Of a DNA stretch of 64,000 nucleotides, positions 50,547 to 62,397 are shown piece by piece. Position numbers and translations under genes: made by a program. The stretch spans positions 2,942,647-3,006,646 of the forward strand of contig NW_002060951.1 in the NCBI RefSeq assembly GCF_000150275.1. Reading direction: 5' to 3'. The DNA is from Trichoplax adhaerens (lineage: Eukaryota; Animalia; Placozoa). The notes beneath the pieces were generated by a model. That model did no database searches. It saw nothing but the letters and a program-made list of their open reading frames with translations, and was not told the origin of the DNA. Position 1 is the first letter of the stretch. Each line of letters starts with the position of its first letter.

Positions 50547-53500
50547 ATGAAGCTTGGATTAGAATCGTTTATGAAATTGACAATATTTCTTTTTCAGCTT
50601 GGTTTGGTCAGGTCTTCTCTATTAGACATTTATATACAACCATTAGATTATGTTGGCGATAAGGCTATCTCTCCGTCTGTTATGGAAACAGTTCAACTTC
50701 ATTGCCTAGCACGCGGACGTAATATTACTTATAGGTGGCTACATGACAATACCGCAATACGCGAGACTGGAAGAGTCAGGATCGCGAACGGCAGCTTACT
50801 AGTCACGAGCGTGTCAACATCAGATCAAGGTCGCTATCAATGTATAGCTGAGGGGCGAGAAGGAATATCTCTTAGTCGTTTTGCTACATTAGAGATTCTC
50901 GCACTTCCATGGATGTCGTCAGATTCTAAACCAGTAATTGCGAGCGAGGGAAACTATTCCTACCTACCATGTGGTATTGTCTCTACTACTAAACCATGGC
51001 CTTCAATTATCTATTGGACAAAGAAATCAACAGGTCAGAATCCAGCAGACGGTAAAAGAGTATTTGTTTCCTCGGCGACAGGCAATTTATACTTTAGCTA
51101 TGTCACAAAATTAGATACCGATGAGTATCGATGCCATATTATCAGCGAAGTTTTTCATCAGTATCTGAACATATCTCTTAAACAAGAGAGTCAAAGTATT
51201 TGGAAGATATTAAACGTTGTTGGTGAGTCAAATAGAAGTTCGTTTGCAGCGCGGATACTTTCTGAAGGAGCTCATAGGGTTACTACAATGAAGAGAATCG
51301 AAGGGATTAGTACAGTAGTTCTTGATTGTATTGCTGTTGGTAGACCTCTGCCGTTGATATACTGGGATCGATCAGGAGGACCTCTTCCCTTTGATAGATA
51401 TAACTATGAGAATAATGGACGTCGTTTGATATTGAAAACAGTTACCAGTAAAGATAGCGATCGATATCGATGTCACTCTAGAAATGTTTACGGTGAAGAT
51501 ACAGTTATATACAAACTACAGGTTGAAAGACGTCCACAGTGGATTAGCCCTGTTCGAGACGTTTTCGTTGCAGTACAACAGTCGGAATTTCGATGGCCTT
51601 GTATTGCATCTGGATCCAGCATCACTTACTTATGGTTTGCAAATGGAAATGAAATCAAAAATAATTCCAAGTATTCAGTATTCCCAAATGGCAATCTAGT
51701 CATTTCATCTGTGACCAAGGACGATTCGAAGATTTTCACATGCATTGCCAAGAATAATTTCGACAATATCGCCTCATACGGCAGATTAAATGTAATTTCC
51801 TCTTCACCTAAGTTTATTAGCTCTGTAATGGCACAAACATTTTTTTTGCACACAACAGATATCCTACAGTGTGCCGTCTTTGGCGGTCCGAGACCAGATA
51901 TGGAGTATTACCGAGATACAAACTATATTAATACTACGAACAGAAAATTTGAGAAGTACCAAAATGGTAACTTAAAGCTGCATGATGTCGTCTTGGAAGA
52001 CCAAGGAGTTTATCGCTGCATGGCGAGAAATTCTCATGGGGAATCTTCTAAGTTAATTAATGTTGTCGTTCGTAATCAGACTATTTTATCTATTAACTCC
52101 TCTAAGGAAGTATTAATTCGGAGATATTACTCTTTCGCCCTTACTTGTAGCGTAACAAAAGATGCTCGTTTATTAATGCAGTTGGAATGGCGAAAGGATG
52201 ACGTGAACTTGAGTAATTGCAGTGGTATTATTATTTATCACATTTCTCCTCTCGTTTCTTTGTTAACGGTATCAAATGCAACATTCAACTATACTGGAAT
52301 TTATAGTTGCATAGTTAAACTATATGATGATCGATTTCTTAATAAATATATAGCTAATAAGACTAAGTTGATTGTGGTGGATATTCCTGATCCTGTGCGT
52401 AATATTACTTATCATGAATTAACAGCTAAAAGTGTTTTTATAAGTTGGGTTCCTGGATCAGAAAATTTTAAGCCTTTAATCCGGTTTATAGTACTTTACC
52501 AAGTAAATAACAACACATCCTTTAAAGTAGCAAATCCTGATATATCTCCAAATATGAATACGGCAAAGCTTAACTTATCGCCTTGGAATAGATATCGAAT
52601 TACAGTAGTGGCTGAAAACGGTGTCGGGAGGAGTAAGAGTAATCAAATTATTGAACTGCAGACCAAAGGTTCTGTTCCTATTTATTTACCAAATATTGTA
52701 AGAGCCACTGGATCGAAAAGTATGCCAGATGTAATTAGTGTCCGCTGGACTCCATTGCCTCGAGAATACCATTGTGGTCCAGGAATTCAATATTTTCTTT
52801 TGCATAAAGAGCGGGATAACCGTGGTCAGAAATATACAAGAATCAGATTACTTAGTCACTATCAAACTATGATTCATGGTCTCCGAAGTAACATTATTTA
52901 TGAAGTAAGGATGCAAACCAAAAATTACTATGGTGAAGGAAACATGAGCACCCCAATTTTTGTTAAAACCGGACTCGCACCGCCAGGTTCGGCGCCTGAT
53001 AAAATAGAAGTTTTCCAAATCAATGAAACAAGTGTACAAATATTTTGGAGAAAAATTGCATCATCGATAGTCAATGGTTATAAGGTAACCTGAATATTTA
53101 ATTTCTACTTATTTTGATCTACGATAGGTATCTTAGGCATTCTTACCTAAATATGAGATAAAATGTTGGTCATCGAGCTATTTCGATCTGTTCAGGACTG
53201 TATATACTGGTATGCACTGGTGTCCTACATTTGAAAAAAAATTTATAGTTTATTTTTGGTCTAGTGACGCAATAATCATATTTTAAAATTCCAGTGCAAA
53301 AAAATAATTGGGTGACTATCGTAAAATGTATAGGTTGTCTATTCTTTAAATGATAGCGATGCGGTAAATGTGATGAGAATTGGCGACGTTTCGTCTGCTG
53401 TGATTACTGGATTATTAAGTAATTATGTCTATACCTTCAACGTAAATGCCTACAACAATGGTGGCGATGGGCCTCAGAGCGAAGTTGTGTACATAACTAT

Positions 53501-59500: not shown

Positions 59501-62397
59501 TAACGTATTGAATTTCCTATGGTGCGTCCGGTGTAGGTATTTATTTTAGACATTTTAAAGAAATTTATGGGAGCCAAAAGTAATCGAAAAAATCGTTTCT
59601 GTAATATTTTTAAAACAAGTAACTCGCATTAGAAGTACCAATTCAAGGAAGTTAAACAAATTTTTCTTACGATTTTTAATCGGAGTTACTCTCGTAGAAC
59701 TGTCGGTATTCTTAAGTTCAGTTTGCAGCAGTTGCATATTTTGGTTGATAAATAAGTACAGCACAGACTAGTAAAAATTAAAAGTTATTACGGCACTACC
59801 GCGAAGTCTTCATTCTTCTATTCTTTTAAATGATAATGTACTGTTTTACCGTTCTTTTTTTTATAATACGTTTACGTTTTTTTTTAATACGTTTCACTGT
59901 AGATATTTAAAATTTATGTGTTTAGGGGCAAATGAACAGCTGACGGTTCTAAGCGATGTTTGTCTGTAAACATATTTTGATCTAATTTCTTTATCCATAA
60001 AGGAGATTATTTTCTTTTAAAAGAATAACGAGCGATTGTTTTAAACATAGGCATTGATTCATTTCATTGCATGAATATAAATTTTACAACGTTAGATATT
60101 TCGTTATCAGTAAATCGCTTCGAAGAAATTCGTGAAATGTGCTATATATACAATATTTAACAAGATTAGACTCCGGTTATAGACAGTATGTTCCGTATTC
60201 TTTACGATAGCCCTTAAGGGAACTTAAATCGCAATTGTATTTGTTATTATGGAAGAGTATCGTTTTCTGCTAAGGATATGTCAGGGTTACTTAAATGATA
60301 GGATCATCAGTATCAAAAAATACGAATGCATAATTTGGCAGTATGATTTTTTGTATATCCGCGCAGAAATTTACTGTATAGATTTTTAGTTTACTTCTTG
60401 TTAGATAGACTTTTTTTTTAATTGCAACTTAGAATAGTCCTTTTCTTACTGATTAGGCTTACCGGCAGTCCTTCTGATCATTTCGGTATTTACACAATAT
60501 CCAATGGAAGTCAGCAGCACCTGGTAAGGAAAACTTACGAACTGCCGTATATTTCAATATTTTCTTCTGATTTAGATTAATATTTTAAGAATTTAATTTG
60601 AAAACTGGTACCCATAATTTATCGTTATATTTTCACTTCTTTTTTATGCATTTATACATTATTTGTTTCTATGTCACGGCAATCACAAATTATTCGTAAA
60701 AAAATTGTTTTCATATAATTTATTGTTGATTTATTACAATTGGACTTCAGAATTTTGACGATGCGTAAGAATTTTTGTAACATTTAAGTATTGATAGTTT
60801 TATGCGATCGTATTTTGCAGTTATTGCCGAAATCATCATTATATATTTTATCTTCTAATCATGCCAATCAGTGCCATATCCGCAGTAAGTTTACATTTCA
60901 TATATATAGTTATGTAAATACAGTAGGCTATTAACAGCTTTCGTTAAATTTCTAAATTTATTAGAATTTCTGCTTACCACCCGATTCTTTTGTTACAAAA
61001 TCTACAAGTGTTAATGTTACTAGTTTCATATATATCATTTATTTGTATATTTAAGGGCTTTAAAAATATCAGATAAACCTTAATTGGAATGTATTTAAAA
61101 ATGTCTAGTAACTTTGGCATAAATAATTTTTCTTTTATTCTTTGTGAATTTCCGTTATTAATAACTTCCATTATTTTAGCTTAGCGTATGTGTTCTTGTT
61201 CGATACGTCAAGTTTATTTATTTAATGGAAATCTCACATAAGAAAGTACTAGGGAAAGGCTTTAGGTTCGTAAGTACAGAAATTGCTAATTTCGAGCCTA
61301 AATTATCCATTCTGCTAATATTATAATAAATTTTACTGCAGCTGCGGTAGAATTAAATTAAAATTTATTCATATTTTTCATATTAGTCTCGAAAAAAATT
61401 TATACAGAAAGTTCGTAAATTTTACTGATGAAAAATTTTTCTTTTCTTCGTATTTACATTTTATGTACATCACACGGATAATCTGTTTACAATTTAGTTA
61501 TTAACTCGTATAATCATATTTCAGTATACAGTATGTTACACGGTAAGCTCGACGTTATTACAGTTTTAAGAATTTCTTTATTAGGTCATATAATATAGTA
61601 TCCCTGGTCATTTCTGTATTTTAAAGGATTCTCTTTCTTAGTTTTCATAACCAAGACGTGATCATTCTTTTTTACGTTTGCATATAGGAAACACCTACAG
61701 TTTTTCCTTATTTCGGAAAATCGATTATTACTAGGCCTTTGTGAAATCATTTTAATCCTTCATTTTAATTTTATTTTTAGACTGATGTGACACAACTTTT
61801 GTGATATAGTCGGTTTTATTTGTACGCGTCATATATTTCTATTTTACGTTTCATAATGATATTCTTTATTATTGACAGTGGCTATTAATATAACTTATGC
61901 AATGATAAAGTAAAGTAAGTTGGTAATATTTGCTCTGATTTACGTGTATAGACTTTAGTCTTTATACACGAATCTGATTAGTCTATATACACATAAAATC
62001 TGAGGAAATCAGCAATTAATTCAGAAATGCCAGTAGCACGGTCTTTCTCAGTATATAGAAATTTTCCTTTGTTTATTAATCTTTACCTCATTTTATTTAG
62101 TGTTTCGAAATTTTTTTAATTAGTATATTAATGAAAATTTTCTAAAGTAGCACACAATCAGAAATTTAGTATCATTTTTTGGTAATTTAAGTTCACTTAA
62201 TTGCTAAATTTTTTTCTTCCATGAAAGGCATGTTAAGGTAGTCTTTTAGATTTATCGATTACGCCTTTCTTTCAGAACGTATGCGGGTCTGCCTCATATT
62301 TCTTTCTTAAATTAGAGATGTTTCCGTAGGTACTGTACTTGTAAAGTTTTATTTTCAGGGTTTAATTGAACTACTCTCATTGATTATTTTTACATAA
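50547..62397 (+). CDS. Adhesion GPCR: signal peptide-6xIg-3xFN3-EGF-Ig-HormR-GAIN/GPS-7TM (3' end tentative)
   Basis: Phase-compatible exon chain. 50547-53084: 6 Ig plus 2.5 FN3. 53334-53523: rest of FN3-3. 53638-53757: EGF CQNHPCYRGYC..CACSPGWIGQFC. Two Ig half-exons. HormR CKSE..GVQWSAT..CPENFV|GIAKRKC..WENPDLTEC. GAIN exons. GPS CVYW..GC..CNC. TM1 ISLVCNTLTF, TM3 YFFVLSCFTWATIE, TM4 AYGY|GLPAVLLII, TM5 FYLLIMPI. TM6/TM7 exons beyond about 61540 are ambiguous. Confidence 0.85.
56820..56884. repeat. Intronic inverted repeat (16-bp perfect arms, 17-nt spacer)
   Basis: ACAAGGTAGCTAGGCA (56828-56843) pairs with TGCCTAGCTACCTTGT (56861-56876); extends 8 bp further with 2 mismatches. Confidence 0.9.

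What the first reader, a model, noticed from the sequence alone, without database searches (positions are those of the whole stretch)
50547..61542. Chimeric receptor: contactin/L1-like cell-adhesion ectodomain fused to an adhesion GPCR
Seen in the sequence: the 848-aa ORF has a signal peptide, six Ig domains (each with C..W/Y..YxC-type motifs) and FN3 repeats with contactin/L1-like signatures (RVFVSSATGNLYF, LSPWNRY, VRWTPLPREYHCGPGIQY). It does not end in a GPI signal or single TM. Instead it splices at GYK|GT (53085) through about 20 phase-compatible exons into EGF, a seventh Ig, HormR, GAIN/GPS and secretin-class TM helices. Established: contactins are 6Ig+4FN3+GPI and the L1 family is 6Ig+4-5FN3+TM; I know no vertebrate adhesion GPCR with a 6Ig-3FN3 head. 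Inference: a neural-type IgCAM wired directly to G-protein signalling, probably in a neuron-less animal. It could be a Rosetta-stone fusion for the contactin-latrophilin interaction reported in mammals. Automated annotation would probably split it into two genes.
Basis: partly seen in the sequence, partly recalled or inferred. Interest (0 to 1): 0.9.

Follow-up and report, generated by a model that had tools for sequence, protein, structure and literature searches.

The report
L1/contactin-headed adhesion GPCR in Trichoplax
In the nerveless animal Trichoplax, one gene puts an entire L1/contactin-type cell-adhesion head on an adhesion-GPCR body; RNA confirms the fusion, public annotation hides it as a truncated "Contactin-6", and the receptor's last helices are still unresolved.

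Summary
The 848-aa ORF (50547-53093) encodes a signal peptide, six Ig and 2.5 FN3 domains. DNA-like runs show no such joints.

The window is Trichoplax adhaerens, gene TRIADDRAFT_59150. The head is colinear with placozoan L1-family paralogs and with contactin-2 up to the exon 2/3 junction, and its Ig1-4 fold as the contactin horseshoe. The tail aligns colinearly with ADGRL3 HormR-GAIN-7TM (E 7e-12).

Three corrections:
- Annotation does not split the gene. Both public models keep it whole but stop inside the 7TM, and the H2 model is named "Contactin-6".
- The GPS reads N-Y|S instead of H-L|T, so self-cleavage is unlikely. TM6 is uncertain and TM7 was not found, so G-protein coupling is unproven.
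- Ig/FN3-bearing aGPCRs are not unique. At least four other loci in this genome show an Ig/FN3 array followed by Ig and 7tm_2, and the literature reports Ig/FN3 in invertebrate aGPCRs.

Verdict: a real, expressed gene and a new variant of a known kind, of moderate interest.

The parts
50547..53084 (+). Exon 1: signal peptide, Ig1-Ig6, FN3-1, FN3-2 and the first third of FN3-3. Ends at GYK|gt, phase 0.
   Evidence: ORF. Pfam 6 Ig + 2 fn3. Colinear with contactin-2 8k3j, E 1.2e-66. Ig1-4 model pLDDT 91, TM 0.74-0.80 to contactin horseshoes. RNA joint 53084|53334.
53334..53523 (+). Exon 2: rest of FN3-3. This is the last part shared with the L1/contactin paralogs.
   Evidence: fn3 2.5e-5. RNA joints. 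Paralog colinearity ends at about aa 908-921.
53638..53757 (+). Exon 3: EGF domain, phase 1-1. First exon of the non-L1 part.
   Evidence: Pfam EGF 3.1e-5. RNA joints 53523|53638 and 53757|53893.
53893..54048 (+). Exon 4: N-terminal half of Ig7.
   Evidence: RNA joints. Sequence has the Cys..W pattern. Present in P0170 and P0206.
54429..54575 (+). Exon 5: C-terminal half of Ig7. Omitted from both public gene models but present in the RNA contigs.
   Evidence: I-set 0.015. Joints 54048|54429 and 54575|54784 in X7 and X10. Absent from P0170/P0206.
54784..54885 (+). Exon 6: first half of the HormR (HRM) domain.
   Evidence: HRM 0.005. HRM 21.6 bits over aa 1005-1061 of P0206. RNA joints.
55202..55305 (+). 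Exon 7: second half of HormR.
   Evidence: RNA joints 54885|55202 and 55305|55465. HRM hit spans both exons in P0170/P0206.
55465..57210 (+). Exons 8-13 (55465-55626, 55883-55957, 56037-56136, 56229-56342, 56726-56816, 57093-57210): GAIN domain, subdomains A and B.
   Evidence: All joints seen in RNA. Pfam GAIN 20.2 and 16.7 bits, below the cut-off of 26.5. Colinear phmmer match of aa 1011-1480 to ADGRL3 8jmt, E 7e-12.
57429..57827 (+). Exons 14-15 (57429-57490, 57707-57827): GPS motif (C-V-Y-W ... G-C ... C-N-C-M-N-Y|S-N-I-G-L-L) and the Stachel-like segment. The cleavage triad H-L|T is replaced by N-Y|S.
   Evidence: Read directly from the sequence. Joints 57490|57707 and 57827|57911 in RNA; 57210|57429 inferred from piece lengths. 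The nearest paralog keeps C-V-C-N-H-L-T.
57911..58265 (+). Exons 16-17 (57911-58014, 58154-58265): TM1 and TM2.
   Evidence: 7tm_2 21.0 bits (cut-off 20.6) over profile positions 8-127 in P0206. TM1 is 64% identical to the paralog over 25 aa. RNA coverage.
58822..58972 (+). Exon 18: TM3, ICL2 and the start of TM4 (..G-Y-G).
   Evidence: 7tm_2 0.0028. Best PDB hits are all aGPCRs, ADGRL3 first. RNA joint 58265|58822.
60457..60523 (+). Exon 19: TM4 (G-L-P-A-V-L-L-I-I-S..).
   Evidence: The loose end of the X7 and X10 contigs after 58973 matches 60458-60487.
60821..60884 (+). Exon 20: ECL2 Cys and the first half of TM5. Predicted, not seen in reads.
   Evidence: Same 64-nt size and same phases as the paralog's exon. 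tblastn 52% identity over 21 aa.
61180..61265 (+). Exon 21: end of TM5 and ICL3. Predicted.
   Evidence: Same position and phase-2 donor as the paralog's exon (86 vs 89 nt).
61656..61735 (+). Candidate TM6 exon (F-L-R-L-H-I-G-N-T-Y-S-F). It runs into TAG at 61733-61735. Uncertain. Alternatives start at 61532 or 61688.
   Evidence: Phase-2 acceptor as in the paralog; motif resembles the L-L-P-L-L-G-x-T-W of 20 Trichoplax aGPCR exons. No HMM support.

Best explanation
This is one expressed Trichoplax adhaerens gene (TRIADDRAFT_59150) of at least 21 exons. Exon shuffling replaced the C-terminal half of a placozoan L1/contactin-family adhesion molecule (FN3-4/5, single TM, cytoplasmic tail) with the membrane-proximal module of an adhesion GPCR. 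The break lies exactly at the FN3-3/FN3-4 boundary, at a phase-1 intron. The product is: signal peptide, Ig1-6 with an Ig1-4 horseshoe, FN3-1 to FN3-3, EGF, Ig7, HormR, GAIN/GPS, then a class-B2 transmembrane bundle.

Inferred mechanism: the horseshoe head binds a partner on another cell or in the matrix, homophilically or heterophilically, as L1 and contactins do. The rigid FN3-EGF-Ig-HormR stalk passes binding or pulling force to the GAIN domain. Because the GPS reads N-Y|S instead of H-L|T, the receptor probably stays uncleaved. Any signalling would then have to be cleavage-independent. Whether the 7TM still couples to G proteins is open, because TM6 is uncertain and TM7 was not found.
For: One gene, one RNA:
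- X10 holds a single 3997-nt contig spliced through the junctions from exon 1 to the TM3 exon and running on; most of these joints are listed GT..AG. X7, an RNA-Seq library from another study, shows the same joints.
- The DNA-like runs X1 and X4 are colinear with the genome.
- The frame is open over 1566 codons.

Head:
- Pfam gives 6 Ig + 3 fn3.
- It is colinear with contactin-2 (8k3j, E 1.4e-73 over aa 44-901) and neurofascin.
- It is colinear with Trichoplax paralogs P0152 and P0171, which carry the L1-type Bravo_FIGEY tail, up to aa about 915.
- It falls in a placozoan clade sister to bilaterian L1 + contactin.
- The Ig1-4 model has pLDDT 91 and pTM 0.83. It superposes on contactin horseshoes at TM 0.74-0.80, against 0.32-0.38 for extended Robo and titin.

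Tail:
- ADGRL3 HormR-GAIN-7TM (8jmt) aligns to aa 1011-1480, E 7e-12.
- 7tm_2 scores 21.0 bits, above the 20.6 cut-off.
- HRM and GAIN hits are below cut-off but in the right order.
- All ten ESM-atlas neighbours are GPS/7tm_2 clusters; the top one is Latrophilin/Cirl at 0.90.
- The TM3 exon hits only aGPCR chains.

Constraint: of 17 exonic variants between runs, 9 are synonymous and 8 are not, where about 3:1 nonsynonymous would be expected by chance.
Against: - The HRM and GAIN Pfam scores are below the curated cut-offs.
- A whole-genome 7tm_2 scan with 133 hits does not list this locus.
- TM5-TM7 candidates hit neither Pfam nor an HMM built from 20 Trichoplax TM6-7 exons.
- The best TM6 candidate stops 7 codons after the helix.
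- The GPS lacks His and Leu.
- Junctions 58014|58154, 60523|60821 and all later ones were not seen in the reads I laid.
- The contigs are k-mer assemblies, not single molecules.
- Ligand, adhesion and signalling are all inferred.
Confidence: 0.85

Rival explanations
1. A decaying or non-signalling receptor. The fusion is real, but the transmembrane part has lost GPCR function: an uncleavable GAIN and a truncated or degenerate TM6-TM7. The protein would then work only as a multi-pass-anchored adhesion molecule, in effect an L1-like CAM with an unusual anchor.
For: - The GPS reads N-Y|S.
- The locus is absent from the genome-wide 7tm_2 hit list.
- No TM7 was found, and there is a stop right after the best TM6 candidate.
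- The candidate last exons have low coding scores.
Against: - Variants in the FN3-3 to TM3 part are biased towards synonymous changes.
- TM1-TM5 keep the family motifs and the intron positions of the paralog.
- The RNA contigs continue 735-863 nt past the TM3 exon, so unseen exons exist.
- The nearest paralog's TM6-7 also escapes the HMM although its GPS is canonical. The misses may therefore reflect subfamily divergence, not decay.
Confidence: 0.3
2. Two neighbouring genes, an IgCAM and an aGPCR, joined only by read-through transcription or by chimeric contig assembly.
For: Both public models are truncated, and Logan contigs are assemblies rather than single molecules.
Against: - FN3-3 and Ig7 are each split across exons that make sense only when joined.
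- Every exon is phase-compatible, with no stop over 1566 codons.
- No start codon with a signal peptide precedes the tail.
- The same joints appear in two studies.
- Both independent annotations join the halves.
Confidence: 0.03
3. Rosetta-stone reading. The fusion records an ancient functional partnership between contactin/L1-type IgCAMs and latrophilin-type aGPCRs, the same one seen as the CNTN6-ADGRL1 cis-complex in mouse brain.
For: - The best solved relative of the head is contactin-2, and of the tail ADGRL3.
- CNTN6 binds ADGRL1 (PMC5156884; listed in PMC13197933).
Against: - The head sits in a placozoan clade outside both L1 and contactin.
- The tail has no RBL or OLF domain, and its Ig-HormR junction is ADGRA-like.
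- The PDB holds few HormR-GAIN-7TM chains other than ADGRL3, so that hit is biased.
- Placozoans attach CTLDs (PMC6321704) and other Ig/FN3 arrays to aGPCRs, so fusions there are promiscuous.
- Placozoan aGPCRs cannot be assigned to vertebrate groups (PMC6422961).
Confidence: 0.12

Closest known systems
Contactins (CNTN1-6) and the L1 family (L1CAM, NrCAM, neurofascin, CHL1), including the Trichoplax L1-like paralogs RDD37386 and RDD40632
   Same: Signal peptide, six Ig domains with an Ig1-4 horseshoe, then FN3 repeats. Colinear over about 900 aa. 33-34% identical to the placozoan paralogs and 25-28% to vertebrate members.
   Different: Only three FN3 domains. No GPI signal, no single TM and no FIGEY ankyrin-binding tail. 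After FN3-3 it continues into EGF-Ig-HormR-GAIN-7TM.
Latrophilins (ADGRL1-3 / Cirl / LAT-1)
   Same: The HormR-GAIN-7TM module aligns colinearly with ADGRL3 (E 7e-12). The ESM-atlas top cluster is Latrophilin/Cirl. Invertebrate latrophilin-like receptors with EGF, Ig and FN3 domains have been reported (PMC6422961).
   Different: No RBL (lectin) or olfactomedin domain. The GPS is not cleavage-competent by sequence. The 7TM is very divergent.
ADGRA2/ADGRA3 (GPR124/GPR125)
   Same: An Ig domain directly before HormR-GAIN-7TM, and a GPS that departs from the cleavage consensus. This comparison rests on my own knowledge of the family.
   Different: ADGRA heads are LRR repeats, not a 6Ig-3FN3 module.
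Placozoan lineage-specific aGPCRs (CTLD-aGPCRs of Kamm et al. 2019; Ig/FN3-array aGPCR loci found here)
   Same: The same theme of grafting adhesion or recognition ectodomains onto secretin/adhesion 7TMs. Locus C1401 shows FN3, I-set, HRM, GAIN, GPS and 7tm_2 in order.
   Different: Those have canonical GPS and 7tm_2 scores. Whether any of their heads is an L1/contactin-type colinear unit was not tested. The window gene's nearest 7TM paralog (C1409) has no Ig/FN3 head within 17 kb.

Membership tests
Adhesion GPCR (class B2) | GAIN domain with a GPS motif immediately N-terminal to the 7TM | tested here: met
   Pfam GAIN 20.2 bits (below the 26.5 cut-off) at aa 1107-1259 of P0170. The GPS Cys/Trp pattern is read directly from the sequence. 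Colinear ADGRL3 match E 7e-12.
Adhesion GPCR (class B2) | Seven-helix 7tm_2 bundle | tested here: inconclusive
   TM1-3 score 21.0 bits against a cut-off of 20.6. TM4 is seen in RNA, and TM5 is supported by the paralog's exon structure. TM6 is a candidate only and TM7 was not found.
Adhesion GPCR (class B2) | Autoproteolysis consensus H-L|T/S at the GPS (typical, but not universal in the family) | tested here: not met
   The sequence reads N-Y|S. The nearest paralog has H-L-T.
L1CAM family | Six Ig domains with an Ig1-4 horseshoe | tested here: met
   Pfam 6 Ig. AF2 model TM 0.69-0.72 to neurofascin and 0.74-0.80 to contactin horseshoes.
L1CAM family | Five FN3 domains, a single TM and a cytoplasmic FIGEY/ankyrin-binding tail | tested here: not met
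   Three fn3 only and no Bravo_FIGEY hit. Paralogs P0152 and P0171 have both.
Contactin family | Six Ig + four FN3 + C-terminal GPI signal | tested here: not met
   Ig1-FN3-3 is colinear with CNTN2, but FN3-4 and the GPI signal are replaced by the EGF-Ig-HormR-GAIN-7TM exons.
Latrophilin (ADGRL) | N-terminal RBL lectin domain (plus olfactomedin in vertebrates) before HormR-GAIN-7TM | tested here: not met
   No Gal_Lectin or OLF hit in P0170 or P0206. The HormR-GAIN-7TM part is met.
ADGRA (GPR124/125) | LRR repeats + Ig + HormR + GAIN | tested here: not met
   The Ig7-HormR adjacency is present, but there is no LRR hit.

The most novel reading that the evidence does not exclude
The gene is a natural covalent version of an IgCAM-aGPCR cis-complex. 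On this reading, L1/contactin-type homophilic adhesion was coupled to latrophilin-like 7TM signalling before nervous systems existed. The mammalian contactin-6/latrophilin-1 complex would be the split descendant of that partnership. Placozoa would then hold a whole family (five or more loci) of IgSF/FN3-array aGPCRs that do the cell-cell recognition work.
Probability: 0.12. Interest if true: 0.8.

Novelty: new variant of a known kind. Interest (0 to 1): 0.5.

Why it matters
- **A precise example of domain shuffling.** An entire L1/contactin ectodomain, horseshoe plus three FN3, was moved as a unit onto an adhesion-GPCR chassis. The breakpoint is a phase-1 intron at a domain boundary, in an animal without neurons.
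- **An annotation blind spot.** The gene is filed as "Contactin-6" or "uncharacterized", and both models stop inside the 7TM. GPCR surveys keyed on 7tm_2 and IgCAM surveys keyed on names will both misclassify it.
- **A testable construct.** It could be used to ask whether IgCAM-type adhesion can drive aGPCR signalling without GAIN cleavage.
- **Limits.** Ig/FN3-bearing aGPCRs and placozoan ectodomain grafting are already known, and the signalling end of this protein is unresolved.

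Tried and rejected
- The 69%-identical ortholog P0001 from another placozoan could not be fetched for exon conservation.
- **Wrong first guesses.** My hand-picked TM4-TM5 exons at 59117-59326 were refuted by the RNA loose end, which lands at 60458. 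I first thought exon 13->14 had a phase clash. It was my misreading: acceptor 57427-28 gives exon 57429-57490 in frame.
- **Exon finding.** A dynamic-programming exon chain over-fitted with many tiny exons. Codon log-odds could not separate the candidate last exons from intron background.
- **TM5-7 searches.** Pfam on seven candidate TM5-7 segments found nothing. An HMM built from 20 Trichoplax TM6-7 exons gave no hit above 4 bits in the window.
- **Spurious TM7 match.** An apparent TM7 similarity to the paralog (62066-62113) turned out to align with the paralog's intron read-through.
- **Tail homologs.** Word-index searches with the tail (aa 1000-1440 and 600-1484) found only the Trichoplax models and P0001. 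None of 204 head homologs carries a similar tail.
- **Literature by accession.** A search by accession found no paper naming this gene.
- **Joined model.** I did not hand my own joined spliced model to any search tool. Searches were exon by exon by reference, or used the public joined models P0170 and P0206. In scripts, exons were joined only to check frame, hydropathy and codon statistics.

Full report
**What the window is.** The window is G000:C1406:2942647-3006646 of a 105.6-Mb, 1414-contig, roughly 33% GC genome. The 848-aa ORF is 100% identical to TRIADDRAFT_59150 of Trichoplax adhaerens.

**Observation.** The ORF 50547-53093 (+) exists. Pfam finds six Ig stretches and two complete fn3 domains in it. 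The downstream pieces were searched exon by exon, by reference. They give fn3 (53334-53546), EGF (53637-53759), I-set (54383-54577), the first half of HRM (54783-54899) and 7tm_2 positions 75-127 (58822-58989). Each hit is weak alone, but they come in the right order.

**Is it one transcript?** I laid four public runs on 53030-59029.
- Run X10 holds one 3997-nt contig. It starts about 1.1 kb inside exon 1, is spliced through every exon to 58973, and continues for 863 nt more.
- Run X7 is an RNA-Seq library of a different study and shows the same joints.
- Runs X1 and X4 are colinear with the genome, introns included, and show no joints. The spliced form is therefore RNA and not a processed DNA copy.
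- The loose end after 58973 matches 60458-60487 and reads as TM4. This refuted my own earlier guess of exons near 59100-59330.
- Twenty exons joined in a script give 1566 codons without a stop.
- Junctions 57210|57429 (inferred from piece lengths), 58014|58154, 60523|60821 and all later ones are not directly listed in the read output.

**Public models.** The gene is not split in annotation.
- P0170 (XP_002115042, 1451 aa, "uncharacterized") and P0206 (Trichoplax sp. H2 RDD37175.1, 1484 aa, named "Contactin-6") both join the big exon to the EGF, HormR, GAIN and first TM exons.
- Both skip exon 5 (54429-54575, the second half of Ig7), which the RNA contigs contain.
- Both run off into intron sequence after TM2 or TM3.
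- On P0206, Pfam gives 6 Ig, 3 fn3, an EGF-type hit (EGF_DL_JAG, 20.7 bits, cut-off 27), HRM 21.6 bits (cut-off 26.2), GAIN 16.7 bits (20.2 in P0170; cut-off 26.5) and 7tm_2 21.0 bits (cut-off 20.6, profile positions 8-127).
- No paper in the library names the gene by any accession.

**The head.**
- It is colinear with contactin-2 (8k3j/9ba4, E 1.4e-73, aa 44-901), neurofascin-155 and contactin-1.
- Within Trichoplax it is 30-34% identical, end to end, to a family of L1/contactin-like genes. Two of these (P0152, P0171) have five fn3 domains and the L1-type Bravo_FIGEY cytoplasmic region.
- The colinearity stops at aa about 908-921. That is the end of FN3-3 and the exon 2/3 junction, a phase-1 intron.
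- A quick maximum-likelihood tree puts the head, with its 68%-identical ortholog P0001, inside a placozoan clade (SH-aLRT 99). That clade is sister to bilaterian L1 + contactin (87). The head is therefore L1/contactin-superfamily, not specifically contactin. The careful tree search did not finish.
- An AlphaFold2 model of Ig1-4 (pLDDT 91.2, pTM 0.83) superposes on contactin, axonin and neurofascin horseshoes at query-normalised TM 0.69-0.80 and 3-5 A rmsd. On extended Robo1 and titin it reaches only 0.36-0.38.
- The long intronless first exon is shared by the paralogs, which have open frames of 846-896 aa clustered on contig C1384. It is a family trait and not a retrocopy captured by this gene alone.

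**The tail.**
- phmmer of P0206 against PDB sequences aligns aa 1011-1480 in one stretch to ADGRL3 HormR-GAIN-7TM (8jmt), E 7e-12.
- The TM3 exon alone hits only aGPCR chains, ADGRL3 first.
- The ESM-atlas neighbours of aa 1000-1484 are all GPS/7tm_2 clusters. The top one is Latrophilin/Cirl at 0.90.
- The GPS is recognisable: C-x-x-W, then G-C, then C-x-C. The cleavage triad, however, reads N-Y|S instead of H-L|T. The nearest paralog keeps H-L-T.
- There is no RBL, OLF or LRR domain.
- The Ig-HormR adjacency recalls ADGRA (own knowledge).

**The 7TM end.**
- A genome-wide 7tm_2 scan (133 hits) does not list this locus, so the bundle is divergent.
- Its nearest paralog is at C1409, about position 5214917 (-). 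It shares TM1 (64% over 25 aa) and TM3 (37%), and the same intron positions and phases at TM3|TM4, TM4|TM5, TM5|ICL3 and ICL3|TM6. This supports window exons 60821-60884 and 61180-61265.
- That paralog has no Ig/FN3 head within 17 kb.
- For TM6, the best candidate is 61656-61735. It has a phase-2 acceptor like the paralog's, and its motif (I-G-N-T-Y-S-F) compares with the family motif L-L-G-x-T-W-x-F. It meets TAG at 61733, seven codons after the helix.
- No TM7 was found by Pfam, by a local HMM of 20 Trichoplax TM6-7 exons, or by motif search.
- Hydropathy counts the signal peptide and TM2-TM5 at a strict threshold. TM1 falls below it.
- Variants between runs in the FN3-3 to TM3 exons are 9 synonymous to 8 nonsynonymous. 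This suggests purifying selection, on small numbers.

**Context in the genome and the literature.** Crossing the own-genome hits for fn3, I-set and 7tm_2 shows at least four other loci with an Ig/FN3 array, then an Ig, then a 7tm_2 about 4 kb on, all on the same strand:
- C1401:1381217-1402419
- C1402:1629354-1645727
- C1396:1296962-1313931
- C1397:484964-466585

At C1401, Pfam confirms fn3, I-set, HRM, GAIN, GPS (44.5 bits) and 7tm_2 in order within 7 kb.

Published work already reports:
- fn3 and Ig domains in sponge aGPCRs (PMC4302439);
- EGF, Ig, LamG and FN3 in invertebrate latrophilin-like receptors (PMC6422961);
- FN3 among ancient aGPCR ectodomains (PMC12716839);
- 28 CTLD-bearing secretin/adhesion GPCRs in Trichoplax sp. 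H2 (PMC6321704).

L1s and contactins are known in Placozoa (PMC10084454). The 2026 aGPCR review mentions fibronectin only within the name of the ligand FLRT, and it lists contactin-6 as an ADGRL1 partner (PMC13197933). Word-index searches with the tail found no protein outside Trichoplax sharing it. Those searches are limited in sensitivity.

**Verdict.** The gene is real and expressed, and it encodes an L1/contactin-type head on an adhesion-GPCR body. It is a new variant of a known kind, not a new kind. Modular aGPCR heads, including Ig and FN3, are established, and this genome holds several. What is particular here:
- a complete, colinear L1/contactin unit with a clean breakpoint;
- a probably uncleavable GAIN;
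- an unresolved C-terminal 7TM;
- a public name that hides the receptor part.

**Limits of the work.** Only one read-laying run was available. My joined exon model was not submitted to any search tool.

Noticed in passing
G000:C1401:1381217-1402419 (+) (L004 = 1395500-1404499); also C1402:1629354-1645727 (+), C1396:1296962-1313931 (+), C1397:484964-466585 (-): Four other loci show long Ig/FN3 arrays followed by an Ig, HormR, GAIN, a canonical GPS and 7tm_2 on the same strand. This suggests a family of IgSF/FN3-array adhesion GPCRs in Trichoplax. Only C1401 was checked with Pfam, and none was checked with RNA.
   Followed up: partly
G000:C1384, about 58700-260200 (both strands): A cluster of at least six L1/contactin-like paralogs, each with a single open frame of 846-896 aa carrying Ig and fn3 hits. 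The intronless 6Ig-2.5FN3 first exon is therefore a family trait.
   Followed up: partly
window 54429-54575: Exon 5 (second half of Ig7, 147 nt, phase 1-1) is missing from both public gene models but present in RNA contigs of two studies. This is either an annotation error or an in-frame alternative exon.
   Followed up: partly
G000:C1409:5213000-5216000 (-) (L002): The nearest 7TM paralog of the window gene has a canonical GPS (C-V-C-N-H-L-T) and the same intron phases. It has no Ig/FN3 head within 17 kb upstream, and its TM6-7 also escapes the 7tm_2 profile.
   Followed up: partly
window about 62690-62740: A run of N (an assembly gap) lies about 1 kb downstream of the last exon I could place. 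It could hide a terminal exon.
   Followed up: no
window 53030-59029, run X1: The DNA-like run X1 differs from the reference at many intronic sites and by several small indels, including a 3-nt insertion behind 56738 inside exon 12 and a 3-nt deletion at 57860. It comes from a different strain or haplotype of the same organism label.
   Followed up: no
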